Positions 5,625-60,712 of a stretch of 64,000 nt of DNA are shown here, in pieces. Under the pieces are notes generated by a model that did not search any database, was not told where the DNA came from, and saw nothing but the letters and a program-made list of their open reading frames with translations. How positions within the stretch are numbered: position 1 is the first letter of the stretch; every line of letters begins with the position of its first letter. Position numbers and translations under genes: made by a program. The stretch lies in IMG/VR virus record IMGVR_UViG_3300044625_001067, positions 186,001 through 250,000 of that record, one strand, 5' to 3'.

Positions 5625-5659
5625 GAAAAGCTGACGCATTTCGGTGCGTTTTCACTAAG

Positions 5660-5690
5660 AGCCTTCAACTTTCGAGTTGGGGGCTTTTTT
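5660..5690 (+). terminator. Intrinsic terminator
   Basis: AGCCTTCAACT-TTCG-AGTTGGGGGCT followed by T-run. Confidence 0.8.
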
Positions 5691-5702
5691 CGTGAAAAAG
5701 AA

Positions 5703-5710
5703 GGGTATAA
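5703..5710 (+). promoter_or_regulatory. GGGTATAA variant promoter for major capsid gene
   Basis: Variant of the recurrent motif just after the terminator, 96 nt upstream of capsid ATG. Confidence 0.5.
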
Positions 5711-5798
5711 CTACAGTGACCCCAAAGTTTTAGGACTCGCGGGTCGGATTGCTTCGGCAATCTTTGAAGTCAACTTTACACACAAGGAAACATCTATT

Positions 5799-8700: not shown

Positions 8701-9486
8701 TTGCTTAGGCAAAGATGATGATATAGTCTGAGCTTCATGGAAACATGAAGATGTGGGGGATAAAAAGCCTTCACGATAACACAATGAATGAACAGCTACG
8801 AGTACACCGTTGCTCAAGCTGTTTCCGTCACCGCGACTTACAACCCTTACGAGCCCTATAACGGAACCGCAGGTTCCCAGACCGGACTCGGTTTCACAAC
8901 CTGGACAAACTTCAAGACAGCTTACGGCTCCGTTGCTGGAGACGCCGCCTGGTCTGGTGCTACTTCTAACCCAATTGAAGACATCCTAACCCTCAAGCGT
9001 GCAGTCGCCAACCAAATCGGTATCCGTCCAAACTCCGCAGTCGTCGGTACTGCCGTGTTTGACCTCTTGCTGACCAACGAGAAGATCCTTGATCGTATCA
9101 AGTACACATCTGCAGACAGCGTCGACACTGACGTCATTGCTCGCTACTTCGGTCTTGAGCGTGGCCTACGTGTTGCCGAAGGTCGTTACTTAGCGCAAGA
9201 TGGAACCCTACAGCCGGTATTCCCAGCTAACGGTATCCTTCTGTTCTACAGCCCTAACGGTCCTTCTGATTCCATCATGCCTGCTGGTGGTGCGAATGCT
9301 GCGACTCCTGCCTTCTCTTACACATATCAGCTCACAGGCACCCCCGCCGTCCGTCCCGAATACTACATTCGTGAACGTCGCGTTGTGCGTGCTGAAATCA
9401 CAATTGAACGTGTGGTTAACCTGGTTGGCCTCGGCGCAACTGGTCTTATCGGTTCTGGCGCTATGATCACCAACATCCTATCCTGA
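5799..9486 (+). CDS. Major capsid protein, spliced: join(5799-5807,6072-6103,7033-7272,7546-7567,8435-8487,8787-9486), 351 aa
   Basis: Removing five group I introns gives one 1056-nt frame: MMNLQQTYAGVDPILTTLAQGFMLPSTNIANFIAPVVDTPTRAGRILRFGKEQF...LPEEVIENAGEGPAQVDLRAIETRNAMSRLMNSYEY...; VDP.LT.LA.G / FGKE.F pattern of Mu-like capsids; RBS AAGGA upstream. Confidence 0.9.
5808..6071 (+). ncRNA. Group I intron 1 of capsid gene (264 nt, ORF-less)
   Basis: P1 GAAU|...GUUC with U-G; P3 CGGGUG/CGCCCG; GCAATCAGCAG; TTCAACGACTA; GATATAGTC; terminal G 6071. Confidence 0.9.
6104..7032 (+). ncRNA. Group I intron 2 of capsid gene (929 nt, carries HNH ORF)
   Basis: P1 CCAU|...GUGG; P3 CCGGUG/CGCCGG; same core motifs; terminal G 7032. 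Confidence 0.9.
6257..6973 (+). CDS. Intron-encoded HNH homing endonuclease with NUMOD3-like repeats
   Basis: HEHHIHP..MGGSD..NLIYLTPRAHYIAHQLL HNH signature; SEETRNKLSEA / SREKISNS repeats; lies within intron 2. Confidence 0.85.
   Translation: MTDPRITLPRAPGLTSYRQLNRYFFFLEKFGSLEKFKCCHEHHIHPTKMGGSDAKVNLIYLTPRAHYIAHQLLFRAFTGNQQAQRAAWLMSHTIDEAFVNSRVYEFLKNNYIFSEETRNKLSEAGRNRKLSFESREKISNSNKETYRNTSKEVLLERIERMRETKRGTPWNESHRNSIPPSLPRGRDHWRLKDSPLWGVSDEILKVWLENGKPSYVMLCRLLGIPKTKSVMSVIKSMI
7273..7545 (+). ncRNA. Group I intron 3 of capsid gene (273 nt, ORF-less)
   Basis: P1 GAGGU|...GCCUC; P10 UCAAU/AUUGA; P3 CUGGGUG/CGCCUAG; core motifs; terminal G 7545. Confidence 0.9.
7568..8434 (+). ncRNA. Group I intron 4 of capsid gene (867 nt, carries HNH-like ORF)
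   Basis: P1 GAGGGU|...GCUCUU; P3 CUGGGUG/CGCCCAG; core motifs; terminal G 8434. Confidence 0.9.
7724..8374 (+). CDS. Intron-encoded HNH-like homing endonuclease
   Basis: KYEKWYWTLI...ENHHPVPK...VSVREHFILHLLL; C-terminal region resembles that of 6257-6973; within intron 4. Confidence 0.75.
   Translation: MSFDNNNSSTSAQSNITCHYRNKYEKWYWTLINKFENRDYLPKKFENHHPVPKEIWPKDWDSREIITTVGVSVREHFILHLLLTKVGFSHSSLIRFLKGFRRGQQRGLHATNLKKLWDRYQFKGDNLPDKPWEHSYREDLSFLDLWVDADYFYWVWLNILPTPLGKGSGYPGNGYRNLSKAVGVKPTKSIRRMVIYFKAGWDPLKDPSWLDFVAKI
8488..8786 (+). ncRNA. Group I intron 5 of capsid gene (299 nt, ORF-less)
   Basis: P1 GGCU|...GGCC; P10 CAUU/AAUG; P3 UUGGGUG/CGCCCAA; core motifs; terminal G 8786. Confidence 0.9.
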
Positions 9487-47765: not shown

Positions 47766-48524
47766 TTAAAAGTCAAGTGAAAGATCCTCTGTGTCACACT
47801 TGGAGAAAGACCCAAGAATATCCTCAGAAGTCTCATAGCCCTCGCACCCCTTTGACCGATTAGCTGAGGAGCATACCAGAGAGAAATTAGCCTTTGCAAG
47901 GTGATATCTCTTCCATTCTTCCCACAGGGCTTTATCCTTGAACTCCTTTGCCGTAGGTGGGCCCACCAGAAAAATGTCTACGTAAGTTAACGAGTTTAGT
48001 TTAACGAACGAATCGGCAATTTCAGCAAAAGACAGACCTACATGGTCTACGTCAGTCCTCATTCCCCGTCTTAGGTTCTTTCCCGTCAGATAGCAAGTTG
48101 CCGGAAGACACACAGAGTCCCGAAAGTCCTTCAGCTGTTGAGAAACCCCGCTCCTCATGGCCGCCTTCACAGAATTAAAGTGTTTCTCCTCTGAGCTTGC
48201 GCTTGTCGCGATTTTCTTCGGAGGGTACAAAAAGTCTATAAGTTTCTTCTTGGGCACGGGTTGTTGAGAGCCACCTCTTTCGAGGCTTAGCATTTTCACT
48301 CTCATGCCGCCAGCGATATCAACATTCCTAAGGTAGAGCTTAACTTCAGGGTCTGTAGACAACTTTCCCCAAGTAGGTGTGACTCGGCACGACCTTAAAA
48401 CAAACTCCTTCGGTTCACCAATAAGCTGGGAGTTTACTCGGTGGTTCTCTATAATTCTACTTAGTTTGTCTGTGTAGTCTTTTTTGGTTAGTCCGAATGT
48501 TTGTTTGCCGAGAGTGTTGCTCAT
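47766..48524 (-). CDS. Putative HNH-like nuclease (possible DUF3223-like N-terminus)
   Basis: CYLTG....DVDH...VCSSANRSK beta-beta-alpha-like pattern; own GGGTAAAG motif on minus strand; ends LSLDF. Confidence 0.55.
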   Translation of the reverse strand: MSNTLGKQTFGLTKKDYTDKLSRIIENHRVNSQLIGEPKEFVLRSCRVTPTWGKLSTDPEVKLYLRNVDIAGGMRVKMLSLERGGSQQPVPKKKLIDFLYPPKKIATSASSEEKHFNSVKAAMRSGVSQQLKDFRDSVCLPATCYLTGKNLRRGMRTDVDHVGLSFAEIADSFVKLNSLTYVDIFLVGPPTAKEFKDKALWEEWKRYHLAKANFSLVCSSANRSKGCEGYETSEDILGSFSKCDTEDLSLDF

Positions 48525-48538
48525 TGAGTAGGTTCGTA

Positions 48539-48553
48539 TGAGAAACTTTACCC
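48539..48553 (-). promoter_or_regulatory. GGGTAAAR-N5-YA putative promoter (minus strand)
   Basis: Reverse complement GGGTAAAGtttctCA, ending 14 nt before ATG at 48524. Confidence 0.65.
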
Positions 48554-48598
48554 TTGCTTAAACGGCGCTAAACTCCAGGTAGAAACAACTAGCTAAAT

Positions 48599-48973
48599 GT
48601 GACCGAGGATACCTCAGTAATACGACAGCGAGGCGATCTAAAGTACCTAGTAGGAACTGAGGTTGAGTGCTCAGGTAGAGTGAAAGAGTTTCGACCCCAT
48701 GTGAAGAGAAAAGATCTTGATTCTCTGTGCCTTGTCAACGTTTTTGTAACCCCTTTGCCCCTGGGGGAGTCTGTATACCTTGATCACTTATGGGTATTGA
48801 AAAAGCAGTTTAAAGTAGTGGGAAGTGTACCACAGAAAAACGAGCGTATACACTTCATCGGCAAAGTTTACTCCTACAAGAGGGTAGGAGGGAAGTCAAT
48901 TGACAGGGGCTTATTTGGACTCGAAGATTTTGGAATCCTACCATTAACTCTCTCTGAAGATTATGAAAATTGA
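48599..48973 (+). CDS. Hypothetical protein (OB-fold-like)
   Basis: First gene of divergent operon. Confidence 0.5.
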   Translation: MTEDTSVIRQRGDLKYLVGTEVECSGRVKEFRPHVKRKDLDSLCLVNVFVTPLPLGESVYLDHLWVLKKQFKVVGSVPQKNERIHFIGKVYSYKRVGGKSIDRGLFGLEDFGILPLTLSEDYEN

Positions 48974-49217
48974 AGTCGAAAGCCACGACCACGACGGACG
49001 GACTTACTTTGAGTTTGTTCTGCAAGACGGGCCGGGAAACCGAGAACGGGTTCGGGGCTACGCAACAGACCTAATCGTTGCTTTCACGAAGGTGATAGAA
49101 TGGCACGAAAGGATTGAAAGAGAGTACCGTGACGCCCATGGTTTACTACCCTTGGAGGCAACCTACAATAAAGCTGAAGCGGACGACCCCGCCTTAGAAA
49201 ACTTACCTAAACAGTGA
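48963..49217 (+). CDS. Hypothetical protein
   Basis: Overlapping operon gene. Confidence 0.5.
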   Translation: MKIEVESHDHDGRTYFEFVLQDGPGNRERVRGYATDLIVAFTKVIEWHERIEREYRDAHGLLPLEATYNKAEADDPALENLPKQ

Positions 49218-49834
49218 AACCAACAGAGTTAGAGTTTAAAGAGCTCAAGCGAAAATCGTCAGAGTGGGCGAAAGAGCGCCTTGCTGATACAAAAACGGTA
49301 GTCATCGACTGCGAAACCACAGGGATACTAAGAAACGACCCTACGACGGAAATTGTTCAGCTTACTGTAACAAACACCGCTATGCGACCGTTGTTTTCCA
49401 TGCTGATAAAACCCGCTCAGCCAATGAGCGACCAGCTTGTTGGAATACACGGCATATCCAACGACATGGTTAGTGAGAGCCCTGTCTTCCCTCAAGTTGC
49501 AAAGCTAATATCTTTCATCCTAGATGGTAAGCACGTTGTTGCGTACAACGCGGATTTTGACATCGCCCTCTTAGTACATTTGTACAAGAAATACAACATG
49601 GCGGTTCCCAAATTTTCGGGGGTGAGTTGCTGCATGGACAGATACTCAGAGTGGAAGGGTGAGTGGAACGAAAGCAAGGGCAGTGTACGCTGGCAGAAAC
49701 TTCCGAACCTGTCGGGAATGCCCGCACACGATGCCCTTGCAGATTGCATATCTACCGTCCGTATCATGGACCTCATGGCGAAGGGTTTGGACCTTGCCGC
49801 TTTAAGCTCCGACGAAATTTCTCTCGACTTTTGA
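49214..49834 (+). CDS. DEDDh 3'-5' exonuclease (DnaQ-like)
   Basis: VIDCETTG, IHGI, AYNADFD, HDALAD. Confidence 0.9.
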   Translation: MKPTELEFKELKRKSSEWAKERLADTKTVVIDCETTGILRNDPTTEIVQLTVTNTAMRPLFSMLIKPAQPMSDQLVGIHGISNDMVSESPVFPQVAKLISFILDGKHVVAYNADFDIALLVHLYKKYNMAVPKFSGVSCCMDRYSEWKGEWNESKGSVRWQKLPNLSGMPAHDALADCISTVRIMDLMAKGLDLAALSSDEISLDF

Positions 49835-49839
49835 ACACC

Positions 49840-50214
49840 ATGTTGTTTGGTACAATTACCTTTCTCTACGAGCCTTCCACCGAGGGGTTCCCAGCTTTCA
49901 TTGACGCCGAAGATCCATCCGACCCACGAGTATCTATACAGTTTTCGTCTGAGGCGGACCTTAGCGAAATGATTGAGAATTTTGAGCGGTTCTTGAGAGC
50001 AATAGGCTACCCGTTAGACTACGACGAGTTTCTTGCATTGTCCTCGGGTGAAGAGTCACAAAGGGGGAATGAGCCCGTGGAACACCCTGTTTTCAGTGTT
50101 CAAGACCCTGTTATTAAGATCAATGACTCCACTGCCGTAGCCACTATGGCTGAGATTGTCGCGGGGATTGCTGATAGACTCGAAGCCCGTCTAACCTCAC
50201 AGGGAGCTTCTTGA
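49840..50214 (+). CDS. Hypothetical protein
   Basis: ATG 49840 within ORF 49663-50214; FERFLRAIGY. Confidence 0.55.
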   Translation: MLFGTITFLYEPSTEGFPAFIDAEDPSDPRVSIQFSSEADLSEMIENFERFLRAIGYPLDYDEFLALSSGEESQRGNEPVEHPVFSVQDPVIKINDSTAVATMAEIVAGIADRLEARLTSQGAS

Positions 50215-50215
50215 C

Positions 50216-51019
50216 ATGGAGAATAACAATCCGTGGTTCATCGAAGGCTCTAGCAAATCTCGCCTTGTAAGCACCACTCCCCAAGGGGAAGAGCTGATAG
50301 CCTACATCGCACGAGTAACAAGCAAAGACCAGAGCAACCCTAAAATTGAGAATCTGCTCAAGTACTGTGCGAAAGAGGGTCACTGGAGCGTGTTTGACCA
50401 GGCCGACCTCACTGTGGAAGTTGTAACACCGCTTGCAATTTCTGTCCAGGTACTTAGACATAGTTCGTTCAAGTTTCAGCAGTTTTCGGGGCGGTACGAA
50501 AACCAAGAAATGATGCGTAAGCACACGGAAGACTTACCGACATTCAAGGATCTCTTCTACATGCCTGAACAGGCGCGGTTGCAAGACACCAAGAACCGGC
50601 AAAACAGCTTTGTAGCCGAGGACCCCAGCCTCACAGACTTTATGTTGGCTGAGTTTGAGTTTGCGTATAAAGCAGCGCTCCAGTCCTACACAAACCTTCT
50701 GGACAAGGGCATCGCAAAAGAGATGGCCCGATTTGTGCTACCTGAAGGAGTATACACTCGCATGTACCTTAAGGGAAGCGTTCGCTCCTTCATTCACTAC
50801 ATCGGAGTGAGAGACGATGAGGGTGTGGCGCAGTGGGAGCACGTTGAGTTAGCAAGGGCGGTTCGAACAATCTTTTCAACACAGTTTCCTACCATCTATC
50901 GCTCCCTGTTCGATGAGAAGACACAAAAGCCCTTATACGCTGAAGACGAGAAAGCTCGTGAGATCCTAAAGCTGAAGGCCACAATCGAGCTCTTAAGAGA
51001 ACAATTACCCACGACATGA
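50216..51019 (+). CDS. thyX: Flavin-dependent thymidylate synthase
   Basis: AYIARV, GHWSVF, QVLRHSSFKFQQFSGRY, AKEMARFVLP, AQWEH. Confidence 0.92.
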   Translation: MENNNPWFIEGSSKSRLVSTTPQGEELIAYIARVTSKDQSNPKIENLLKYCAKEGHWSVFDQADLTVEVVTPLAISVQVLRHSSFKFQQFSGRYENQEMMRKHTEDLPTFKDLFYMPEQARLQDTKNRQNSFVAEDPSLTDFMLAEFEFAYKAALQSYTNLLDKGIAKEMARFVLPEGVYTRMYLKGSVRSFIHYIGVRDDEGVAQWEHVELARAVRTIFSTQFPTIYRSLFDEKTQKPLYAEDEKAREILKLKATIELLREQLPTT

Positions 51020-51249
51020 ACAATCAACTCGCAAAAGGATTCTGGAAGATTGCGGAGGATTCCCCCCCGGTCGACAAAGAATACTGGGTCGCATTCTCTG
51101 ATAGGAGTGGGGACTTTCAAGTGTCAAATTGTGACGTGTGGCTCTTCAAATCAGGTGAATGGCACAGTTTATCTGACTCGCGATTTTCCGAGGAAGAAGT
51201 TGGCCTTCCGGCATACTATATAGACTTACCTATGCCGAAAACAATATAG
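51016..51249 (+). CDS. Hypothetical protein
   Basis: ATGA overlap with thyX. Confidence 0.5.
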   Translation: MNNQLAKGFWKIAEDSPPVDKEYWVAFSDRSGDFQVSNCDVWLFKSGEWHSLSDSRFSEEEVGLPAYYIDLPMPKTI

Positions 51250-51276
51250 TTTACGAATAGCGGTAGACCCTAGAAT
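51249..51276 (+). promoter_or_regulatory. Second promoter class GTTTAC-N16-TAGAAT
   Basis: Same spacing also at 59655 and 60761. Confidence 0.45.
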
Positions 51277-51298
51277 AAGGGTGCTACCGCTGAACTAT

Positions 51299-52282
51299 AT
51301 GAGTGAAAATGAAACGCCAAGACCAAAATTAGAGTCCTACTTTAAGCTCGATAGTAACCCTGCCCCACTCGTAGTTGTTGATTTCCACGTTTATTTACAC
51401 GACGTGAAACGGTGGTTCGAAGATAAAGTCGAGGGATCTGTAAATAAGGATGTAGAGGACAAACTGATAAAAGGGTGTTGGGCCCTAAAAATTAACCGGG
51501 GGCCAGATATGCTCCCGAGGCACCCCTACCGTATAGTCGTGGTTGCGGATAGTCGGTTCAAAGACACAGGGAACTACTGGCGCGACCGGGTCATGATAGA
51601 GTCCACAGAAGTTCAGACCGCCTGGGTAGAATATGCCGAGAAGAAAGGAAAAGACATATCAGAGATTCCAACTAATTACAAAGGTACTCGGGGGGACAAG
51701 ACAGATACGTTTTGGCGCATCTTTGACATAGGGTGGGAATACGTCAACAAGTACTATCCGGTGTTCTCTCAGGAAGGTTTTGAGGCCGATGATATTGCCG
51801 GGGCCGTTTATCGGCTTTCTCGAGATAGCGAACCAGGGTCTGTTGTAAGAGACCGGCAAATTTTGCTATCCACCCTAGACAGAGATTGGTCTCAACTTGT
51901 AGATGAAGACATTGGAGTGTATTTCGCAAACACTCGTGTCCCCTTCCCAAAAGAGAAAATTCAAGCAAGACTTGTAGATAATGCAGGTGTAATTGAGCAT
52001 ACTAAATGGAGGATGGGTTTTGACTTAGACCACCCCAAAAATCTTGCCGACTGGAAAGTTAAATTTGGTGACATGGGAGATAATTTGCCACCAGGCAGCC
52101 CAAAATCCTTATTCGATTTGACAGAACCCAACCTTGACTACAACATAGAAAAGGACGCCCCATGGTATGAAAACCTTGTAGAATGCTTAAATGAACCCGG
52201 AGTTAACCTTCGGAGTGACCACTTTGATCAAACCCTAGTTCAGTTTGCTAAGGTGGGTTTAGATTCACCAACGAGACTTTAG
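51299..52282 (+). CDS. 5'-3' exonuclease / flap endonuclease (Pol I N-terminal, T4 RNase H-like)
   Basis: VVVD, YWR, YKGTR, FEADDIAG, STLDRDWSQL, GDMGDNLP. Confidence 0.88.
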   Translation: MSENETPRPKLESYFKLDSNPAPLVVVDFHVYLHDVKRWFEDKVEGSVNKDVEDKLIKGCWALKINRGPDMLPRHPYRIVVVADSRFKDTGNYWRDRVMIESTEVQTAWVEYAEKKGKDISEIPTNYKGTRGDKTDTFWRIFDIGWEYVNKYYPVFSQEGFEADDIAGAVYRLSRDSEPGSVVRDRQILLSTLDRDWSQLVDEDIGVYFANTRVPFPKEKIQARLVDNAGVIEHTKWRMGFDLDHPKNLADWKVKFGDMGDNLPPGSPKSLFDLTEPNLDYNIEKDAPWYENLVECLNEPGVNLRSDHFDQTLVQFAKVGLDSPTRL

Positions 52283-52324
52283 GGTGGTAAAACGGGTAAA
52301 ACTAGGGAGAATGATTGTGCCGGG

Positions 52325-52996
52325 ATGCAGTCCGACTTATCCTACTTTGCCCATTGTAACTCAATGGCGCACCTTCTTCTCGAAGCGTGCGAAGGAAATG
52401 CTGCGAGCATTCCCCAGGGTTACCTAGACAACTTTGCCCACGACTTCGCTGATGGGGATGTTTCACTAGTCTCTGCACTCTCTAAGGTTGAGGGGGTGGA
52501 AGACCTGAGTACTGAAGAAGTTGATGAGACCTTAGAGTTGCTACAAAAGGTAAACCCCGATCACTGGCCGTCTGCAGAGTCCATAGAGAGTATATTCCCC
52601 GAAAAGCTCTGGAATAGCGCAAGCGACCCTCAAAGTATTTCCGACGACTTCGTTGAGGATAACCTGGGAACTGCGGAAAAAGTTGAGAGGGTACTTACAA
52701 GCGTTATTGAGAGTGTTTTCGGGGACTCGGTAAACAGCATTCGTGATGCTAAGGGCAAGTACCCATCAAGTTCGAACGACTTTTTGCAAGTAGACGACGG
52801 AACGTTCGCAGGAACTTTTCAGTACGACAGTCATCGTTTCAACTTTGAGATTGCACCAACTGAGCGAGGGTGGATTTGCACATACCGCCTAGATGAGTCA
52901 TCGCTCGACGCAATTCCACAAATTGTGAAAGATGTGAAGAGGGACGATAAGAAGAACACTAGCGTGAAGAAAACCCGTAGCCAGGGATGGAAATAA
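52325..52996 (+). CDS. Hypothetical protein
   Basis: Motif GGGTAAAA at 52294; TAATG coupling to next gene. Confidence 0.6.
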   Translation: MQSDLSYFAHCNSMAHLLLEACEGNAASIPQGYLDNFAHDFADGDVSLVSALSKVEGVEDLSTEEVDETLELLQKVNPDHWPSAESIESIFPEKLWNSASDPQSISDDFVEDNLGTAEKVERVLTSVIESVFGDSVNSIRDAKGKYPSSSNDFLQVDDGTFAGTFQYDSHRFNFEIAPTERGWICTYRLDESSLDAIPQIVKDVKRDDKKNTSVKKTRSQGWK

Positions 52997-54516
52997 TGGC
53001 CTTTTCCGGAGTCATTCCTACAATCTCAGTAAGCTCAAACTCCCTTGTGAACAGTGTTGCAGGGGGTCTAATAAATAATGTCGCATCCTCAGCAGTCAAG
53101 GTAGCATTAAGCCCCAAACTGTCAAACCAATGGGCAAGCTCCTCAGGATTAAGCCCGCAGTCAATTACTTCGCTGTTGAGTTCGGCAGTAACACCTGGGC
53201 TAATTTCAACCGGTAGTCAAGCCATATCCCAGTCCTTGACGGCTTCAATTGTAAACTCTAAAGCCCTTGGCCCCCTGGGTCCGTTGGTTCAAGACTTTGC
53301 GGGAAACGCTGTCAGTAACTTGTCGAGAGACCTGCTGGGTACATTATTCCCGGCAACAGTAAGTAGCCCAACCAAGTTCTTTCCAGGGGCAGGAAACGAG
53401 CCAGACGCGGATTACCAAGGGTACGCTTACAACCCTGGATCAAACGGTGCTGACGTGGTGTTTTCAATTAAGCCCGCAGTATCCGGAGCTCAAGCAGAAG
53501 TTACGGATCAGGTGTCAGGCAAGGGTGGAAGTGGCGTTCAAACATCCATCCCGGCAGGGCAAAGTGTGCCGTCTTCCGGGGGCTTAGCTCCAACACCAAA
53601 AGCAGACTACTCAGCGGCATTCCAGAGCGCATCTGGAGCTGTCCTAGGAGACTTGACAAAACAAGCCAGTTTAGCAGGATCCTTTCGTGGTGTTCCGTTT
53701 GGGAGCCCTGACGCATTTAAGGCAATATCAACAGTCCCGCAGATTCTCACAAGCTCCACAGTAGGACAACCCTTCTCTCAAGACTCACAACAGTCCTCAG
53801 TGTGGAACTTTATCTGCGCACCTGAAGAAATTTCCTGGTCAACCGCCGTTCAGGTGGATAGAGTTCCAATTTTCGGCACAAACCTGCCACCCGTGATATC
53901 GGGCAGCCGGGGAATGAGGGAACTAAGCATGTCAAACGCTCTTGTGGAGGGTTTCACAAGGGGGAAGACCATTGAAGGGAAGGTTTCTGACTTGGAAAAA
54001 CTCCTGAGTTTCACACTGGACACGCAAAACGGCTACGTTAAGGTGCCCGTGTATTGGGTCTATGCAAATAATAAGAGATACGGTGATGTTGACGGTGGGT
54101 GCTTTCTCATTAAAGAAGTGAAAGTGAAGGAGGAAATGAGGGACTTGACTGGCCTTGCAACACGTGCCAAGGTTGACATTTCCTTTTCACAAGTTCCCTC
54201 GTACCAAGTTGATGATGGGAGAGACATAGCAAGCAAAACAGTTTCCGGGACCACATCAAATTTGGGTGCCGTAGCGAGTGTTCTGTCGACTCGTCCAGTA
54301 GTTGTAAATCAGCAGCAGACCAACTCGTCTCGTGGGGGTGGCGTGGCTGGACAAACAAGTCAAAATGTTTCGCCGACAACAAAAATTCCCGGTGTACCCT
54401 CCGGAGCAACAAATGTGAGAGTCAATGTGAATAAAAAGGGAGAGAGTACCGTGAGTTATACTAACAATGGGGTTGAGGTTAGAAAGACATTGCCTCGGGG
54501 TCAAGGGCAGTTTTAG
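52996..54516 (+). CDS. Putative tail tube initiator/baseplate protein
   Basis: FICAPEEISWS...LIKEVKVKE....G.ATRAKVDISF pattern; upstream of tape measure. Confidence 0.55.
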   Translation: MAFSGVIPTISVSSNSLVNSVAGGLINNVASSAVKVALSPKLSNQWASSSGLSPQSITSLLSSAVTPGLISTGSQAISQSLTASIVNSKALGPLGPLVQDFAGNAVSNLSRDLLGTLFPATVSSPTKFFPGAGNEPDADYQGYAYNPGSNGADVVFSIKPAVSGAQAEVTDQVSGKGGSGVQTSIPAGQSVPSSGGLAPTPKADYSAAFQSASGAVLGDLTKQASLAGSFRGVPFGSPDAFKAISTVPQILTSSTVGQPFSQDSQQSSVWNFICAPEEISWSTAVQVDRVPIFGTNLPPVISGSRGMRELSMSNALVEGFTRGKTIEGKVSDLEKLLSFTLDTQNGYVKVPVYWVYANNKRYGDVDGGCFLIKEVKVKEEMRDLTGLATRAKVDISFSQVPSYQVDDGRDIASKTVSGTTSNLGAVASVLSTRPVVVNQQQTNSSRGGGVAGQTSQNVSPTTKIPGVPSGATNVRVNVNKKGESTVSYTNNGVEVRKTLPRGQGQF

Positions 54517-54523
54517 TGCTACG

Positions 54524-54538
54524 GGGTAAAGTCTATTA
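54524..54538 (+). promoter_or_regulatory. GGGTAAAR-N5-YA putative late promoter
   Basis: GGGTAAAGtctatTA upstream of tape measure gene. Confidence 0.6.
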
Positions 54539-54569
54539 ACACCCGGCTATTACCGCACGAGACACGAGA

Positions 54570-57500
54570 ATGGCGGAGAATAAGACCTTTACACTGATTG
54601 GTAAGTTTGACGACCAAATTACCAAGAAGCTAAAGGATCTAAATAAAGAGTTTCAGAAGCTGAGCAAACCCCTCAGCAAGGATAATGCTGCGGCATCTTT
54701 GCGAGACGGATTTAAGGCGGCTAACTCAGAGCTGAAGACTCTTCAGAATGAAATGAAGACTCTGAACAAGCTTCAGTTTAAGTTCGACAAATCCGGTATT
54801 CAAGCAGCTCGCGAAGAAGTACAGATGCTTGGCAAAGACCTTGAATCGGTGTCGAAGAAAGGGCTTCCCATCGATAAGTCTGGGTTAAAGGCGGCGCAGG
54901 AAGATGCAAAGATTCTGGGAAAAATTCTCGAGGCAAACGCACTTATAAAAGTAGGAGAAGGGTTTGCGAATGCTTTAACAGCGGGGGCCTCTTCCGCAGT
55001 AAACATCCTTCAGCAGGGTATAGGGTTCATAGGAAAGAGATACTCTGAGGCAGTTCAAGACCAACTCGGGGATGTCATGGCTCGTGGTTCCCTGTTTGGG
55101 TCCCTAAATAAAGAGGGAATGTTCAAACAGGGGCTGGCCGGCAAAGAGGGTCAGGCATTGAAGGACGCTTCGAACGACATGTACCTGCAGACGAAAAACA
55201 TTAGTCGCTCCATGGATAGCGCGATTAACGAGATTATTCGTACAAGTACAGTAAGCTCCCAAACCATTCAAGTACTATCGAGACAGCTCGGCGACAACTT
55301 ACTTCCCGTAATGTTGAAGGAGAAGGGCATCACAGACCTTTCGATTGTAAGTAGGGAGAAACTAAATGAAGTGATGGGGGGAGAAAACGGCGTCGGCAAG
55401 AAACTCGCTATCTTGTACTCCCAAATCGGCTCTGTAGTCACTAGTCCGGCGTACGCACCCCAGGCTGCTATGGGAGTCACACAGTTCCTTGGATCGGGGA
55501 CAATCAACAGACAATTATCCGTCTTTGAAAATAACCCGATCCTCGTCTCATCCCTCAAAGAGGGTCTTAAAAAGTTCGGTAACACCGTCGAAGGAAGAAT
55601 TAAGGCGGCCAGTTACGGTTTCTCGATCGCAATGCCTGAGGCTGCTCTTGAAGAAGCTAAGAATACGATTGCAGGTGGTATGCAGTCCGTAAACGACACC
55701 TTTCTCGGTCCGTCCGGTATTCTCACATTAACAGCAGACATTAACAAACAGGGGGAGAAGACCCTAGCAATGATGGCCTCAAGTGGGGCGAGAGATAAAC
55801 AAATAGCGAAATATGATAGGCGAAACAAGGAAGTTTTAGACGCTCTTGCGAAACAAGGCAAGAAAGAGTCTGAGATACAGAAGATTGAGGAACAACAGAA
55901 GAACAACAGAGTCCGATTCATAAAAAACCTCGATGACTTCTACAAGTCGGCAGACTCTCCGATCGAAGTAATAGCGACTCAATTCGGGCCCCTGTTGCAA
56001 AGTTTTGCTAACATGATGAACTCGGCGGGGAACCTTTTGATAGGACCCGTTAACTCAATTATTGGCGCACTTGCGAGACCTTTAACGGAACTGCAAGACA
56101 ACTTTGAGAACTTAGGGTCTGAAATTTCTGCAGGAAAAAAGAGCCTAGCTGAAGCACTCGGACGGGGCTTAGCCGAGACTTTTAAGGCACTTGCGAGTTA
56201 TTTCAACCCAGAACAGGCAGGGAAAGATGTTGGAACGGGTATACAAAAGTTCCTGTCGGACTTCATGAAGGGCTTTAAGGGTGGGGAAGTGAACGGTGAG
56301 CGGTACATGAAAATTGTACTCGACACCTTTAAGGACATTGTTCTCAAGATGTTGTTCAACGATGGCAACGCACTCCAAGGTGTTACACCGCTCGGCAACG
56401 CCCTAGGAAAGGTTTTTCTGTTGTTGGCTGCCCCAGCTTTCATCAGTGCTGTAATAGCGGGGGTGGTTCCCCTCGCAATTATGGGATTCGGCAACATGCT
56501 CATGGGTGTTTTTGCTGGCTTGGCAGGAGGTGCTCTGGCGGGTGTGGCAGGATTTGCTCTACCCATTGTGGCGATCGTAGCGGGTTTTGTAATTTTCGAA
56601 GGTCCGTTGCGAATGCTAGCGGATTGGCTGAAGGACACGGGGGCCAAACTATCCGAGAGCACAAACTGGGTCGCTTCGGCAGCCGGACTGTTCTTGGGGG
56701 GCCTGGGTGACATACTTCAGGGACTTACGAATTTCTTCACAGGAATTTGGGATTTACTCGTGGGCATATTCACGGGAAATCAGCAATTGATAGTTCAGGG
56801 CGTTAAAAAAATCTTTAGCGGAATAATTGAAACTCTCATCGGAGCTGCGGAAAGCGTCGTGGGCTTGGGGGGCATAATCATCGGGGCAGTCGGAAATCTT
56901 TTTACGGCCATTGGACGTAAGATTAATGATATTGCAATTAGTGTTGGGGGTTGGATCAGTGACCGTGTGCCTGGGAGTAGCAAAGCGTCTCCGAGACCTG
57001 CTGCCGGTGCGTCTTCTGCAAGAGCTCCGAAGGCAAAGGCATCCGCGTTTGGGAGCGCAAACCCTTTCTCCGGGAGCTTGAGCCAAGCCATAGACTTTGA
57101 AATGGCAAACAAACCACCGAGTTCCAGTCTTGTAATAGCGAACAGCAGTGAAACGGTTATACCTGCTGCGGGTGGTCTTGGAGTGGGCTCTTTCATGGAA
57201 ACTCTCAAAGAGGGATTCGGTCAGCTCACAACCACAATGAACGAGAACAACCAAGTGTACACCGAAAACGGTAAGAGATTCACAGAGGGATTGTTCAAAG
57301 TTTCCGGCCAAGTTATTGAGTCCCAAACTCAAATAAACAGTCTTGGATCGGCCCTATCTAAAGCGCAGGAGCACAATAATAACATGTTCTCTAAGGTCCA
57401 AGAACAACTGAATAGCAACCAAAACCAAACAGCATCAATGTTCTCAGCAATAGGAAAGCAAATCTCTCAAATTGCATCCTCCGCTGGGGGAATGTTTGGG

Positions 57501-58049
57501 GGAGCACTCGGAATGATGTCCGGGAGTTTGGGGGCGGCAAGTTCGCTGGCACAAAATCTAGGACTCACGATAACCTCAACAACGGGAGGGAAACACGCCC
57601 CTGGGTCGTATCATTACGCCGGACGAGCTATTGACGTAGCGGGCTCACCTGGCGCGATGCTCGCCTATGCTCAGCGACTGGCCTCTACTTCGGGGGGCAG
57701 AATGGCAGAGCTTTACTACACGCCCCTGGGATTCAGCATAAAAAACGGTGTGAAGGTTCCATGGACAATTCCAAACCACATGGATCATGTTCACGTAGCG
57801 TACGCTCTCGGGAAGGGGACCCCTGCGTTCTTCTCCAACCAAAAGGAAGCCGAGTCTTGGGAGAGAAAAATGATGCCACCGTCGGCGAAAGTCACTTCGA
57901 TCACCTCAAACACGTCTGAAGGATTCGGTAGCTCAACGATTCACGCCCCAATAACAATTTATCAACAGCCGAATCAAGACCCAGAGGAACTCGCTTCCTT
58001 AGTCGCTATGCGAATTGGAATGGTTGTGGACGAACTTAGGAACCACTAG
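54570..58049 (+). CDS. Tape measure protein with C-terminal peptidase M15-like domain
   Basis: FTL...DQITKKL start, helical body, hydrophobic segments, HAPGSYHYAGRAIDV...HMDHVHVA, ITIYQQPNQDPEELA tail. Confidence 0.75.
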   Translation: MAENKTFTLIGKFDDQITKKLKDLNKEFQKLSKPLSKDNAAASLRDGFKAANSELKTLQNEMKTLNKLQFKFDKSGIQAAREEVQMLGKDLESVSKKGLPIDKSGLKAAQEDAKILGKILEANALIKVGEGFANALTAGASSAVNILQQGIGFIGKRYSEAVQDQLGDVMARGSLFGSLNKEGMFKQGLAGKEGQALKDASNDMYLQTKNISRSMDSAINEIIRTSTVSSQTIQVLSRQLGDNLLPVMLKEKGITDLSIVSREKLNEVMGGENGVGKKLAILYSQIGSVVTSPAYAPQAAMGVTQFLGSGTINRQLSVFENNPILVSSLKEGLKKFGNTVEGRIKAASYGFSIAMPEAALEEAKNTIAGGMQSVNDTFLGPSGILTLTADINKQGEKTLAMMASSGARDKQIAKYDRRNKEVLDALAKQGKKESEIQKIEEQQKNNRVRFIKNLDDFYKSADSPIEVIATQFGPLLQSFANMMNSAGNLLIGPVNSIIGALARPLTELQDNFENLGSEISAGKKSLAEALGRGLAETFKALASYFNPEQAGKDVGTGIQKFLSDFMKGFKGGEVNGERYMKIVLDTFKDIVLKMLFNDGNALQGVTPLGNALGKVFLLLAAPAFISAVIAGVVPLAIMGFGNMLMGVFAGLAGGALAGVAGFALPIVAIVAGFVIFEGPLRMLADWLKDTGAKLSESTNWVASAAGLFLGGLGDILQGLTNFFTGIWDLLVGIFTGNQQLIVQGVKKIFSGIIETLIGAAESVVGLGGIIIGAVGNLFTAIGRKINDIAISVGGWISDRVPGSSKASPRPAAGASSARAPKAKASAFGSANPFSGSLSQAIDFEMANKPPSSSLVIANSSETVIPAAGGLGVGSFMETLKEGFGQLTTTMNENNQVYTENGKRFTEGLFKVSGQVIESQTQINSLGSALSKAQEHNNNMFSKVQEQLNSNQNQTASMFSAIGKQISQIASSAGGMFGGALGMMSGSLGAASSLAQNLGLTITSTTGGKHAPGSYHYAGRAIDVAGSPGAMLAYAQRLASTSGGRMAELYYTPLGFSIKNGVKVPWTIPNHMDHVHVAYALGKGTPAFFSNQKEAESWERKMMPPSAKVTSITSNTSEGFGSSTIHAPITIYQQPNQDPEELASLVAMRIGMVVDELRNH

Positions 58050-58050
58050 T

Positions 58051-59640
58051 ATGGCAAACAGTTTGATAATCCCCCGCTGCGAGGTTGTTTGGGGGGACGT
58101 GAACCTGATGAACCACAACTTCGACGGTAGCACAACGGGGCTGACGAATCAGCCACTGGTGTACAATGTGAGGGTGTCTTTACAAGACTCAGGGCAGACC
58201 CCGACTGGCTCAATGAGATGGAATCCGACTGGCGCCGCGTTCAGCGTCTACGAAAAACTGCTGGAAACTGCGCTCAACCGCACAATTACAGTCCGGTACT
58301 ACTACTTGAATGGACGTTCCATCACCTTTTCGTTCGTTTGGTCTGGACAGACAGAGGTATACGGGAAGGAAATGTCGCTGGAAGTGAAACTCGCGTCTGA
58401 ACTCGACGGGCTCGTGAATGCGAATATAAAGAGTACGGCGCAAGCTAGCGACCAGGGAACGTCGCCTCTAGCAAATTTATCGCAGCTTGACTACACGTTC
58501 GGGGTCGAAAAGTATGATCTTGTGAAAGTCACGAAGCAGATGCAAGAAAGTCTGAAAACAACGAAAGTTCTGTCAAACTATTCCGAGGGGTCCAACTACC
58601 TTGACAGCGTGAAAAACCTAGTTGAGCAAACTGGTGGGCTCGTTATGGCGACGAACATTGTTTCTCCGGGAACTTCTCAAAAACTTTCTGCAAGTTGCGT
58701 GGTGCTGGGGCCGTACTTGTCAGATAAGACCACAGTGGAGGAGCTCGCACCACAGAGTCAGTTCCCCGACCCCACTATTCGGTACGGGTACTTCCTTGGG
58801 CCAGGGATTATAAACACAATCACAAAAACGTCTGAATGGCAGCCCCCTCAAAAGACTCAGACGAGCTTGGAGAGCACGCAAGAAAAGGTTCAGCCTGCGC
58901 AACCGGGAACACAGGGGCAACCTGCGACGTCAACTCCACAGAGCCAGCAAGCAGTGGCGGCTCAACAGTCCCAGAGCAAGAGCGGAGCTGGAAACACGGC
59001 CAACTCTCGTGCTAGGCCCGGAGTGCGCCTAAAGGAAAATCAAGACGGAGAGAAGCGAAAACTTGAGATACAGCAAGAGCGCAGTTCCAAGCTAAGCGCC
59101 TCAGTTTTTATGTGTCCTGCCCTTACCGGTGTGAAGCCGAACGATGTCTTATTTATACCAAACTTCAGTGGAACTTTCATAGAAGACTGGATTGTTAATG
59201 GTATTGAGTACACTCAGACGGATGGTGGAGTGGAAGTTTCCATTCAAGCTAGCCGTCAGTACGGCCTCGGGAATCTCATGAATAAGGCACTCGGCGAGAC
59301 TTGGCTCGGAAAAGCCAAAGAGAAAAACTTGGTCGGAAGCACAGGAACTCTGGAGAGTTGGCACAACTACGCCTGGGGTTCACTAGGGTTTAACACTCCT
59401 GCGCAAACCTACCCCGAGCCATCGAGTGGACAAGTTGCACAAAAAGAGTCGGAGGCTGCAGACTCCTTCCATCTTTTAGCAAAACTTTTTGGAACTTCTC
59501 AGACTTTGGTGACCGACCGGGGCTTGTACGATTATTTGACAAAGGAGCTGGGCATCAAGTTTGTGAACGGAAGCGGTGTTGTTGATCTACCGTTCGAGAA
59601 GGTCAGGCAGTTGAATCTTCGTCGCATTGGCAAAACGTAG
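58051..59640 (+). CDS. Putative baseplate hub protein
   Basis: Follows tape measure; P.L...KPND......W.V..IEY pattern. Confidence 0.5.
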   Translation: MANSLIIPRCEVVWGDVNLMNHNFDGSTTGLTNQPLVYNVRVSLQDSGQTPTGSMRWNPTGAAFSVYEKLLETALNRTITVRYYYLNGRSITFSFVWSGQTEVYGKEMSLEVKLASELDGLVNANIKSTAQASDQGTSPLANLSQLDYTFGVEKYDLVKVTKQMQESLKTTKVLSNYSEGSNYLDSVKNLVEQTGGLVMATNIVSPGTSQKLSASCVVLGPYLSDKTTVEELAPQSQFPDPTIRYGYFLGPGIINTITKTSEWQPPQKTQTSLESTQEKVQPAQPGTQGQPATSTPQSQQAVAAQQSQSKSGAGNTANSRARPGVRLKENQDGEKRKLEIQQERSSKLSASVFMCPALTGVKPNDVLFIPNFSGTFIEDWIVNGIEYTQTDGGVEVSIQASRQYGLGNLMNKALGETWLGKAKEKNLVGSTGTLESWHNYAWGSLGFNTPAQTYPEPSSGQVAQKESEAADSFHLLAKLFGTSQTLVTDRGLYDYLTKELGIKFVNGSGVVDLPFEKVRQLNLRRIGKT

Positions 59641-59654
59641 GGGGCAACACGGGA

Positions 59655-59682
59655 GTTTACTAGTCCGGGGCAAGCCTATACT
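59655..59682 (+). promoter_or_regulatory. Second promoter class GTTTAC-N16-TATACT
   Basis: Upstream of 59741. Confidence 0.5.
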
Positions 59683-59740
59683 TGTGTTGAACGTGCTGGG
59701 CAATAGGGCTCAGTTTATCGCGTTCTTCACAAGTAACACA

Positions 59741-60712
59741 ATGGCTGTAACTACATTCAAAATTCTGCCCCAACTCGACGACAAAAACCGCGCAAGGTTG
59801 GAGTCAAAGAGCTACTCACGGGCATACACCGACATTCCAAACAAGGCTCTACCCGAGTCTTACCGCAATGGGTTGTCAACCATCTTTCGTGCGCTAACTG
59901 GCGAGGATTTCGATCTTGAGGCGTCTACCTTCACTGTGAAGGCTGACCCGAATGGGACCTTTCAACGTCTTTACTCTCCCACAATCTTCTCTACTGAAGT
60001 AGGTGGCCTTGTAATTCGTTGGGGTGATAGGGATATTCCCCTTCTGTTGGCTCCTGGCAAGGTCGGAGTGGCTAACGCCCCGAAAGGACTAAAGTTCGCC
60101 TTTAAGGATGAGCAGATCGGTAAATACACCGAGCCCGTTCTTTCTGTGTCCGTACAAGGAGACGGCACTCTTTACACTCTTCCTATCACAATTCGGAAGA
60201 AGGAAATTAAGGAGGAACTTCCCGCAGATCTTCTCGAACTCTTGCTCGATGAAAATCCCGAAGCGATTGCTGAAAAGGTTTATGCCGCACCGGATCTTTC
60301 CAAGCGTGGTGAAAACACAGGGGGAGAGCGTCTTGTGGGTCCTTTCGTCAAAGTCGCGAGTCTACCCTTAGGCGAATACACAATCACTTCTTATAGGGTT
60401 AAGGAAGGTGGTGCTTTCGGTACTGACTACTTTCTGCAAGCGAAAGTGACTGAGCCATTTGTGGCACCAGTTCGCGTTCAAGTCGAGGGAGAGTGGATAG
60501 ACCAAGAAACCGAAGTCTCCGACTGGGTGATTGTCAAGCCGAACTCCGCAATGAAGAAGATTCTTGCTGCTGAGCCCTTGATTACTCCTGACGCTCCCGC
60601 AACTCTAAAGGTTCTTGAGCACTTCGAGTATAACGGCAACGCTGCAGCAAAAGTGACACTGAAGTGTCCGAACTTTGTTCAGAACCCTGAGAGCTTTGCT
60701 CTGGATTTTTGA
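59741..60712 (+). CDS. Hypothetical protein, possible ssDNA-binding/replication protein
   Basis: Beta-rich, own promoter and terminator, upstream of helicase, ends FALDF. Confidence 0.5.
   Translation: MAVTTFKILPQLDDKNRARLESKSYSRAYTDIPNKALPESYRNGLSTIFRALTGEDFDLEASTFTVKADPNGTFQRLYSPTIFSTEVGGLVIRWGDRDIPLLLAPGKVGVANAPKGLKFAFKDEQIGKYTEPVLSVSVQGDGTLYTLPITIRKKEIKEELPADLLELLLDENPEAIAEKVYAAPDLSKRGENTGGERLVGPFVKVASLPLGEYTITSYRVKEGGAFGTDYFLQAKVTEPFVAPVRVQVEGEWIDQETEVSDWVIVKPNSAMKKILAAEPLITPDAPATLKVLEHFEYNGNAAAKVTLKCPNFVQNPESFALDF

What the first reader, a model, noticed from the sequence alone, without database searches (positions are those of the whole stretch)
47766..60712. Shared C-terminal (S/A)LDF tag on three putative DNA-acting proteins
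Seen: the HNH-like protein ends EDLSLDF, the DEDDh exonuclease ends DEISLDF, and the 59741 protein ends ESFALDF; the proteins are otherwise unrelated. Established: T4 gp43, gp55 and gp33 bind the gp45 clamp via C-terminal SLDF(L/F)-type peptides, and SSB tails end in acidic-Phe motifs. Inference: a common docking peptide for a sliding clamp or other replisome hub.
Basis: partly seen in the sequence, partly recalled or inferred. Interest (0 to 1): 0.6.

Follow-up and report, generated by a model that had tools for sequence, protein, structure and literature searches.

The report
Shared C-terminal docking tail, cyanophage replisome
Three unrelated DNA-handling proteins of a 277-kb cyanophage end in the same conserved peptide (acidic, then Φ-x-L-D/N-F, where Φ is a hydrophobic residue), which is almost certainly a shared docking tag for one partner in a replication machine that has no sliding clamp of its own; the partner is not yet identified.

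Summary
In the whole 277-kb phage genome only three ORFs of at least 100 aa end in LDF (expected 0.03-0.11), and all three lie within 13 kb. They are a DUF3223-family protein (47766-48524, minus strand), a DnaQ-like DEDDh exonuclease (49214-49834) and a 323-aa protein with an OB-fold-like domain, probably an SSB (single-stranded DNA-binding protein) (59741-60712).

The tail is under selection. It is present in 119-120 of the 120 closest database relatives of each family, and in S-CBWM1 and S-TIM5. The three genes encode it with different codons.

In the SSB-like family the tail persists down to about 25% identity, so it is ancestral there. The exonuclease and the DUF3223 protein carry it only in the S-CBWM1-like clade.

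The phage encodes a Pol gamma-like family A polymerase and a primase-helicase. No clamp, clamp loader or canonical SSB was detectable.

The phage-clamp version is not: a clamp partner would have to be the host's beta clamp, and the glutamine that defines that motif is absent.

My best guess follows T7: the tails dock on the phage polymerase or primase-helicase. The rivals are the SSB-like protein's own core and the host beta clamp. The "HNH-like" label was not confirmed.

The parts
47766..48524 (-). p252: a 252-aa protein with a DUF3223/DCL-like N-domain (residues 1-106), a helical C-domain, a roughly 25-residue disordered linker and the tail ...PEDLSLDF. The tail codons are 47769-47789 and the stop codon is 47766-47768.
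   Evidence: ORF. In the fold model (pLDDT 74) the N-domain matches 2k0m (DUF3223) at Z 10.4 over 96 aligned residues. Atlas look-alikes are DUF3223/DCL clusters at score 0.92. There is no Pfam, NCBIfam or PDB sequence hit. All 120 listed relatives end in L-x-L-D/E/N/S-F.
49214..49834 (+). A DnaQ-like DEDDh 3'-5' exonuclease of 206 aa with the tail ...(A/S)(D/E)E-I-S-L-D-F. The tail codons are 49811-49831.
   Evidence: Pfam RNase_T PF00929 at 6e-19; phrog_192 'DNA polymerase exonuclease subunit' at 5.5e-32; NCBIfam dnaQ-type models. The catalytic residues D32, E34, D116, H172 and D177 are invariant in 33 sequences. The tail is conserved in 119 of 120 listed relatives.
59741..60712 (+). p361: a 323-aa protein, probably the phage SSB, with a beta-rich N-domain, an OB-fold-like domain at residues 209-313, a short linker and the tail ...PESFALDF. 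The tail codons are 60689-60709.
   Evidence: phrog_25892, function unknown, at 9e-32. The AF2 model has pLDDT 93.7. The OB-like domain matches bacterial and phage SSBs, Pf3 SSB, PRD1 P12 and HIN domains at Z 3-5.4; Foldseek gives SSB probabilities of 0.7-0.95; BFVD returns phage SSB and DUF669 rows. The genome has no PF00436 SSB. The gene lies directly upstream of the primase-helicase gene, as in S-CBWM1. For the tail.
60820..63773 (+). Context and candidate partner: the DUF5906/D5-type primase-helicase gene, split into 60820-61959 and 62928-63773 by an insert carrying a GIY-YIG homing endonuclease. Neither half carries the tail.
   Evidence: phrog_25243 positions 9-341 and 364-608; Pfam DUF5906; GIY-YIG PF01541.
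50216..52282 (+). Context: ThyX (50216-51019) and a 5'-3' exonuclease/FEN (51281-52282) in the same replication module. Neither carries the tail.
   Evidence: Pfam Thy1 at 5.8e-43; 5_3_exonuc_N at 1.8e-8; phrog_26716.

Best explanation
The tail is a short linear docking motif. It consists of an acidic run, then a hydrophobic residue at -5, any residue at -4, Leu at -3, Asp or Asn at -2 and a C-terminal Phe at -1.

It is ancestral to the SSB-like protein of phages that replicate with a Pol gamma-like family A polymerase plus a D5-type primase-helicase and no clamp. In the S-CBWM1-like clade, which includes this 277-kb phage, a DnaQ-like exonuclease and a DUF3223 protein acquired the same tail.

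All three proteins therefore compete for, or take turns at, one binding site on a phage-encoded replisome protein. By analogy with T7, where the SSB gp2.5 and the helicase gp4 both end in acidic ...D-F tails that dock on the polymerase, the most likely receptor is the Pol gamma-like polymerase and/or the primase-helicase.

Shown here: the motif, its selection, its distribution, and the absence of a phage clamp. Inferred: that it is a docking peptide, and which protein receives it.
For: Selection. The tail is kept in 120/120 (p252), 119/120 (exonuclease) and 119/120 (p361) listed relatives, while position -4 and the preceding linker vary. Each family keeps its own residue at -5 (L, I and F respectively), and the codons differ. 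This points to independent maintenance rather than recent transfer.

Depth. Of 118 full-length 50%-identity representatives of the p361 family, 70 end in hydrophobic-x-aromatic and 19 more carry the motif followed by 1-3 extra residues. The S-TIM5 orthologue ends EEDLNLDF.

Specificity. In G000, in two related contigs of 201 and 136 kb, and in S-CBWM1, exactly these three proteins bear the tail. In S-TIM5 only the p361 orthologue does.

Replisome type. The polymerase at genome 174955-177885 matches human POLG at E 8e-99, with exonuclease motifs I-III intact. The p361 family sits with a Pol gamma-like polymerase and a DUF5906 primase in S-CBWM1, A-HIS1 and an unrelated metagenomic contig.

No phage clamp, clamp loader or canonical SSB was found.

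T7 precedent. gp2.5 ends ...EADEDGDF and gp4 ends ...WSNDTDF, and both tails bind the gp5 polymerase (PMC4124056; bioRxiv 10.64898/2026.05.20.726333; PMC12339929).

The tails of the exonuclease and p252 hang on flexible linkers: the p252 tail has pLDDT below 45.
Against: No binding was tested. The only complex job gave no verdict.

The tails are much less acidic than T7's: 2-6 acidic residues in the last 20, against 7-14. Their conserved features are hydrophobic (positions -5, -3 and -1), which suggests a peptide-in-groove contact rather than T7's mainly electrostatic one.

The helicase-primase does not carry the tail here, unlike T7 gp4.

About one in six family representatives has 1-3 residues after the aromatic, so a free terminal carboxylate is not strictly required.

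The p361 tail is modelled as ordered (pLDDT 77-86), which would fit a site on p361 itself.
Confidence: 0.38

Rival explanations
1. The receptor is the SSB-like protein p361 itself. Its own tail docks on its core, either in cis or on a neighbouring protomer on ssDNA, giving cooperativity or auto-inhibition. The exonuclease and the DUF3223 protein mimic that tail so that they are recruited to SSB-coated ssDNA.
For: In the AF2 monomer model the p361 tail is ordered (pLDDT 86 and 77 for the last two blocks) and follows the OB-like domain after only about 10 residues, whereas the p252 tail is disordered at pLDDT 33-43.

The tail is ancestral in the p361 family and was acquired secondarily by the other two proteins.

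From my own knowledge, not tested here: SSB tails that fold back on their own OB fold are established for E. coli SSB and T7 gp2.5, and herpesvirus ICP8 uses a C-terminal FNF motif for protomer-protomer contacts.
Against: Model coordinates and contacts were not available, so a high pLDDT alone does not show a pocket. If the tail occupies the ssDNA groove, client tails would compete with DNA rather than recruit to it. There is no direct test.
Confidence: 0.25
2. The tails are clamp-binding motifs for the host's beta sliding clamp (DnaN). The clamp-less phage would hang its SSB-like protein, exonuclease and DUF3223 factor on the host clamp, as T4 hangs its clients on gp45 and as Mu's MuC uses E. 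coli DnaN.
For: The hydrophobic pattern at -5, -3 and -1 (hydrophobic-x-L-x-F) fits the six-residue form of the beta-clamp motif (Pol IV QLVLGL type). The core S-L-D-F is literally the start of the T4 clamp motif SLDFL(F/Y).

E. coli epsilon, a DnaQ exonuclease, binds the clamp by a motif placed just after its exonuclease domain (PMC3664792).

Extra residues after the aromatic are tolerated, as they are for internal clamp motifs (PMC3716654).

A phage without its own clamp using host DnaN through such a motif has a precedent in Mu (PMC12867686).

No phage clamp exists here.
Against: The glutamine that defines the bacterial motif, described as 'highly conserved' in PMC3716654, is never among the common residues at the equivalent position. 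That position is E in the exonuclease family, D in the p252 family, and S or A in the p361 family, across 360 sequences and the wider family.

The phage polymerase, which is the client that would gain most from a clamp, ends ...RYEAIQKGLI without the motif.

SSBs are not known clamp clients. The complex job that included Synechococcus DnaN gave no verdict.
Confidence: 0.15
3. The tail is not a docking site for a replisome partner but some other C-terminal signal, for example a degron read by a host protease or adaptor that limits the lifetime of three DNA-acting proteins, or a virion-packaging signal.
For: Short conserved C-terminal tags can serve as degradation or sorting signals (general knowledge). 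The module is interleaved with tail genes: the tape measure gene is at 54570-58049.
Against: The carriers are replication and repair-type proteins. The motif resembles known replisome docking peptides of T4, T7 and bacteria. It does not resemble an ssrA-type tag.
Confidence: 0.05
4. The shared ending is a chance coincidence with no function.
For: The shared part is only three to five residues long.
Against: The expected count is 0.03-0.11 against 3 observed. The tail is near-invariant in hundreds of orthologues of three unrelated families, with variable flanks and different codons.
Confidence: 0.01

Closest known systems
Phage T7 acidic C-terminal tails of gp2.5 (SSB) and gp4 (primase-helicase), which dock on gp5 DNA polymerase
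   Same: Both are clamp-less replisomes built on a family A polymerase. In both, the SSB and at least one other replisome protein share a C-terminal tail ending ...D-F-COOH, preceded by acidic residues. Several proteins use one docking site.
   Different: The tails here are far less acidic. They have invariant hydrophobic residues at -3 and -5. They sit on an exonuclease and a DUF3223 protein rather than on the helicase. Some family members carry residues after the Phe. The receptor is untested.
Phage T4 sliding-clamp-binding motif (SLDFL[F/Y]) shared by gp43, gp55 and gp33
   Same: Functionally unrelated proteins share an interchangeable hydrophobic and acidic C-terminal peptide on a flexible linker. 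The residues S-L-D-F are identical (PMC2988020).
   Different: The chain ends at F, without the following L-F/Y. No gp45-type clamp and no gp44/62 loader is encoded. The polymerase itself lacks the motif.
Bacterial beta-clamp-binding motif (QL[S/D]LF; six-residue form QLxLxL/F), as in Pol IV, Hda, epsilon and Mu MuC
   Same: The spacing of hydrophobic residues (hydrophobic-x-L-x-F) matches the six-residue form. The location is C-terminal. One carrier is a DnaQ-type exonuclease, as with epsilon.
   Different: The defining Gln is absent in all three families. Position 5 is Asp or Asn. Binding to DnaN is unshown.
Bacterial SSB C-terminal tip (D-D-D-I/L-P-F)
   Same: Both are acidic tails ending in Phe on an OB-fold ssDNA-binding-type protein. 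A few distant p361 relatives actually end ...DIPF or ...GIPF.
   Different: Here other proteins carry the same tail as the SSB-like protein, which is the reverse of the bacterial arrangement. There is no long disordered linker, and L-D-F replaces I-P-F.

Membership tests
Bacterial beta-clamp-binding motif (CBM) | Conserved Gln at motif position 1, which contacts clamp subsite 2 | tested here: not met
   The equivalent position -6 is E in 101/120 exonuclease relatives, D in 93/120 p252 relatives, and S or A in 118/120 p361 relatives. In the 50% representatives it is S, D, G, A, T, E or L, and Q is never among the common residues.
Bacterial beta-clamp-binding motif (CBM) | Leu then Phe/Leu inserting into the hydrophobic pocket, with hydrophobic spacing as in QLxLxL/F | tested here: met
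   L at -3 and F at -1 are near-invariant, and I, L or F occupies -5 in all three families.
Bacterial beta-clamp-binding motif (CBM) | Physical binding to DnaN | tested here: inconclusive
   The single complex-prediction job gave 'no answer' and is not used as evidence either way.
T4-type sliding-clamp-binding motif | Core S-L-D-F-L-(F/Y) at or near the C-terminus on a linker | tested here: not met
   S-L-D-F is present, but the chain ends there and the L-F/Y is missing. Compare T4 gp43 ASLDFLFG and gp55 SLDFLYEAND.
T4-type sliding-clamp-binding motif | A cognate phage clamp (gp45) and clamp loader are encoded | tested here: not met
   PF09116, PF02916, PF00705, PF00712, PF02768 and PF13177 all gave no match at E <= 1 in the 98%-complete genome.
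T7-type acidic C-terminal tail | C-terminal Phe preceded by Asp on the SSB and on another replisome protein | tested here: met
   All three proteins end L-D-F. T7 gp2.5 ends G-D-F and gp4 ends T-D-F.
T7-type acidic C-terminal tail | Strongly acidic tail that binds basic patches of the polymerase | tested here: inconclusive
   There are 2-6 acidic residues in the last 20, against 7 (gp4) and 14 (gp2.5). Binding to the polymerase was not testable: at 976 aa it is too long for the complex tool alongside a partner.
DnaQ/DEDDh 3'-5' exonuclease (the 206-aa protein) | RNase_T/DnaQ domain with the D-E-D-D-h catalytic residues | tested here: met
   PF00929 at 6e-19 over residues 29-184. D32, E34, D116, H172 and D177 are invariant.
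OB-fold single-stranded DNA-binding protein (the 323-aa protein) | An OB fold resembling SSBs, and ssDNA binding | tested here: inconclusive
   Residues 209-313 match many SSBs, but only at Z 3-5.4 and Foldseek E of about 1e-2. There is no sequence-family hit. ssDNA binding cannot be tested here.
   The query has no Pfam hit, and only 1 of 45 relatives touches HNH_4, at E 0.087. The fold match to the T5 SciA HNH endonuclease is only Z 4.7, below the sigma-region-2 rows. D158, D160, H161, H208 and N222 are invariant, but their spacing is not canonical.
DUF3223 / DCL family (the 252-aa protein) | The DUF3223 fold in the N-terminal roughly 100 residues | tested here: met
   2k0m (Rru_A0810) matches at Z 10.4, rmsd 3.5, with 96 of 104 residues aligned, well above the next row at Z 6.0. 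25 of 30 Atlas look-alike clusters carry PF11523, at score 0.92. The Pfam HMM itself does not reach threshold.

The most novel reading that the evidence does not exclude
A jumbo cyanophage that has a mitochondrial-type (Pol gamma-like) polymerase and no clamp uses a Gln-less variant of the clamp-binding peptide to hang a whole tool-belt on the host's beta clamp. The tool-belt would consist of an SSB-like protein, a proofreading-type exonuclease, and a DUF3223 protein whose helical domain weakly resembles sigma region 2. This would couple replication, repair and perhaps late transcription to a hijacked clamp, as T4 does with its own gp45.
Probability: 0.12. Interest if true: 0.8.

Novelty: new variant of a known kind. 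Interest (0 to 1): 0.55.

Why it matters
Replisomes built on Pol gamma-like polymerases occur in A-HIS1, S-TIM5, S-CBWM1 and many uncultured cyanophages. They are essentially uncharacterised, and they are the nearest prokaryotic-virus relatives of the mitochondrial replicase.

A conserved tail shared by three proteins gives a concrete experimental handle. A peptide pull-down should name the hub of this replisome. It should also assign a role to two abundant families of unknown function: the p361/phrog_25892 family, which has hundreds of metagenomic members, and the phage DUF3223 proteins.

If the partner turns out to be the host clamp, this would be a new and divergent class of clamp-binding motif, and a further case of a phage without a clamp hijacking the host's. 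S-CBWM1 and its host Synechococcus CBW1002 are in culture, so the hypothesis can be tested directly.

Tried and rejected
1. Complex prediction. The chains were p361 residues 1-308 (tail removed), Synechococcus elongatus DnaN (DPO3B_SYNE7) and the exonuclease as partner. The verdict was 'no answer (no support, and no evidence against)'. Scores were 0.43/0.40/0.40. Controls with the partner replaced scored 0.00 and 0.00. The control with DnaN replaced scored 0.40. DPO3B_PARMW was not held.

2. The idea that p361 is a Pol gamma-B-like accessory subunit related to an aminoacyl-tRNA synthetase. It rested on phmmer hits to GlyRS at E 0.4-0.6. A profile search of the family against the PDB found nothing, and the fold search gave an OB fold instead. 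Dropped.

3. A phage-encoded clamp, clamp loader or canonical SSB. Searches with PF00712, PF02768, PF00705, PF09116, PF02916, PF13177 and PF00436 all found nothing. A clamp diverged beyond recognition cannot be excluded.

4. Correlating loss of the tail with polymerase type. The contigs of three tail-less p361 homologues were only 2.3-2.6 kb, so this was uninformative.

5. Widening the genomic contexts with the search for related loci, using the family alignment or the distant members P0285 and P0250. This gave no usable pattern or no relatives.

6. Sequence-family searches for p361 and p252 in Pfam, NCBIfam and PDB profiles. Nothing significant was found.

7. The ESM Atlas searches for p361: the structure search returned only its own family, and the feature search gave only low-scoring leads (all under 0.9), among them a phi29-type phage SSB cluster at 0.83.

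8. Recent DNA-level copying of the tail between the genes. Rejected, because the codons differ.

Full report
WHAT THE WINDOW IS

The window is bases 186001-250000 of a 277,244-bp IMG/VR virus record estimated to be 98% complete. Its nearest annotated relative is the cyanomyovirus Synechococcus phage S-CBWM1, with which the region 47-64 kb is gene-for-gene syntenic. More distant relatives are Acaryochloris phage A-HIS1 and cyanophage S-TIM5.

OBSERVATION

A six-frame scan of the whole genome finds only three ORFs of at least 100 aa that end in LDF, namely these three. The expectation from composition is 0.03-0.11, giving P(>=3) between 4e-6 and 2e-4. Relaxed patterns add no other credible gene. 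The tails are written in different codons in the three genes.

WHAT THE THREE PROTEINS ARE

(i) 49214-49834 is a DnaQ-like DEDDh exonuclease. It matches PF00929 at 6e-19 and phrog_192 'DNA polymerase exonuclease subunit', and the catalytic residues D32, E34, D116, H172 and D177 are invariant.

(ii) 59741-60712 (323 aa, phrog_25892, function unknown) folds with pLDDT 93.7 into a beta-rich N-domain plus a domain at residues 209-313. That domain matches OB-fold SSBs repeatedly but weakly: bacterial SSBs, Pf3 SSB, PRD1 P12, HIN domains, and phage SSB/DUF669 models, at Z 3-5.4 with Foldseek probability up to 0.95. The genome has no canonical SSB, and the gene sits directly upstream of the primase-helicase gene. 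I read it as the probable phage SSB, but this is an inference.

(iii) 47766-48524 (252 aa) has no sequence-family hit. Its first roughly 106 residues match the DUF3223 structure 2k0m at Z 10.4, and its language-model look-alikes are DUF3223/'DCL family' clusters at 0.92. The helical C-domain matches sigma region 2 (Z 6.0) and a T5 HNH nuclease (Z 4.7) only at background levels. The 'HNH-like' label is therefore not confirmed.

CONSERVATION

In S-CBWM1, at about 45% identity, the three orthologues end ...GDISLDF...DEINLDF and ...GALDLAF. The closest 120 database relatives of each family give the following.

| Family | Tail consensus | Relatives keeping it |
|---|---|---|
| p252 | P-E-D-L-(S/A)-L-D-F | 120/120 |
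| exonuclease | (A/S)-(D/E)-E-I-(S/D)-L-(D/N)-F | 119/120 |
| p361 | P-(E/D)-(S/A)-F-x-L-D-F | 119/120 |

Position -4 and the linkers vary, while L at -3 and F at -1 are near-invariant. Each family keeps its own residue at -5.

An exhaustive search with p361 found 139 representatives at the 50% identity level. Of the 118 that are full length:
- 70 end in hydrophobic-x-aromatic;
- 19 more carry the motif followed by 1-3 extra residues;
- 13 have another aromatic end;
- 16 have none.

The family-wide consensus is an acidic run at -9 to -6, then (L/I), (D/S), L, (D/N), F. The S-TIM5 orthologue ends EEDLNLDF and the A-HIS1 orthologue ends ESDDLLSGW.

Whole-genome scans show that exactly the same three proteins carry the tail in G000, in two related contigs (201 and 136 kb) and in S-CBWM1. 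In S-TIM5 only the p361 orthologue does, and the A-HIS1 DEDDh exonuclease lacks it. The tail is therefore ancestral on the SSB-like protein and was acquired by the other two in one clade.

THE REPLISOME

The polymerase (genome 174955-177885, just upstream of the window) is a Pol gamma homologue. It matches human POLG at E 8e-99, and exonuclease motifs I-III are present. The primase-helicase is of the DUF5906/D5 type. A distant p361 homologue on an unrelated metagenomic contig sits in the same kind of module, with a ligase, ThyA, a DUF5906 primase, a UvrD helicase and a Pol gamma-like polymerase.

No DnaN-, PCNA- or gp45-type clamp and no clamp loader is detectable. None is annotated in S-CBWM1 either. 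Neither the polymerase nor the primase-helicase carries the tail.

MECHANISM

A short C-terminal peptide with invariant hydrophobic positions, sitting behind a variable linker and kept in three unrelated proteins, has the signature of a linear docking motif for one shared site. Three systems are comparable.

1. T7. The SSB gp2.5 (...EADEDGDF) and the helicase gp4 (...WSNDTDF) share acidic tails that dock on the family A polymerase (PMC4124056; PMC12339929; bioRxiv 10.64898/2026.05.20.726333).

2. T4. gp43, gp55 and gp33 share the interchangeable motif SLDFL(F/Y), which binds the gp45 clamp (PMC2988020; PMC7892883).

3. The bacterial beta clamp. Its clients share the consensus QL[S/D]LF (PMC3716654). 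A phage without a clamp of its own, Mu, exploits this through MuC (PMC12867686).

The present motif lies between these. It ends ...D-F as in T7. It contains S-L-D-F as in T4. Its hydrophobic spacing matches the six-residue beta-clamp motif.

It also departs from each. It lacks the defining Gln of the bacterial motif in all 360 close relatives and in the wider family. It lacks the L-F/Y extension and the cognate clamp of T4. It is much less acidic than the T7 tails.

Only in T7 does the SSB itself share its tail with another replisome protein, and the replisome here is of the T7/mitochondrial type. I therefore rank a phage-encoded receptor first: the polymerase and/or primase-helicase, at 0.38. 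The SSB-like protein's own core comes second, at 0.25. Its tail is modelled as ordered (pLDDT 77-86) against below 45 for the p252 tail. The host beta clamp comes third, at 0.15. The identity of the partner is the open question, and it was not resolved here.

LIMITS

No binding experiment or valid binding prediction exists. The one complex job returned no verdict and is reported only under Tried and rejected. The SSB assignment rests on weak fold similarity and on genomic context. A clamp diverged beyond recognition cannot be excluded.

VERDICT

The inference of a shared docking peptide is well supported. The specific idea of a phage clamp is not supported. The hub is unresolved. This is a new variant of a known kind of system: shared C-terminal docking peptides in phage replisomes. 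It sits in an uncharacterised Pol gamma-type cyanophage replisome and can be tested directly in the cultured S-CBWM1 system.

Noticed in passing
window 5794-8750 (+), with flanks 5151-9486: Five Rfam group I intron matches lie within 3 kb, at 5794-6035, 6094-6303, 7263-7508, 7540-8398 and 8478-8750, scoring 51-107 bits. The S-CBWM1 major capsid protein matches the window in three pieces: 7031-7273, 8435-8494 and 8794-9483. The capsid gene therefore appears to be split by at least three introns. Two of the introns carry ORFs, at 6257-6973 and 7724-8374.
   Followed up: partly
window 60820-63773 (+): The primase-helicase gene is split into two halves, at 60820-61959 and 62928-63773. The roughly 970-bp insert carries a GIY-YIG homing endonuclease that is itself broken into two overlapping frames (62022-62408 and 62386-62763). 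The insert also has a sub-threshold group I intron match at 62642-62804 (29.8 bits against a gathering score of 50). S-CBWM1 has the gene intact, at 662 aa.
   Followed up: partly
window 47766-48524 (-), residues about 106-231: The helical C-domain of the DUF3223 protein weakly resembles sigma factor region 2 (6pmj_F Z 6.0, several ECF sigma factors at Z 4-5). A sigma-R2-like domain followed by a linker and an SLDF tail is the layout of T4 gp55. The Z scores are in the range common for helical bundles, so this is only a lead.
   Followed up: no
window 52987-59640 (+): Tail-type genes sit in the middle of the replication module, between the 5'-3' exonuclease and the SSB-like gene. They are a tape-measure-like 1159-aa ORF at 54570-58049 (phrog_58) and the flanking 509-aa and 541-aa ORFs, which have no family hit. 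S-CBWM1 has the same arrangement in gp132-gp134.
   Followed up: no
distant relatives P0329, P0374 and P0298 of the 59741-60712 protein: A few distant family members end ...GIPF...DIPF or ...DIPY, which is the tip of bacterial SSB tails (DDDIPF), instead of L-D/N-F. This suggests that the tail tracks its partner.
   Followed up: no
G000 250544-251065 (+), 544 bases beyond the window's end (L060:544-1062): A 173-aa ORF ends in a very acidic tail with aromatic residues (...AEQGEVEEVEFSY). It has no Pfam hit. It may be another tailed protein of a different type.
   Followed up: partly
window 1-64000: There are no tRNA genes in the window, although S-CBWM1 carries 34 tRNA genes elsewhere in its genome.
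   Followed up: no
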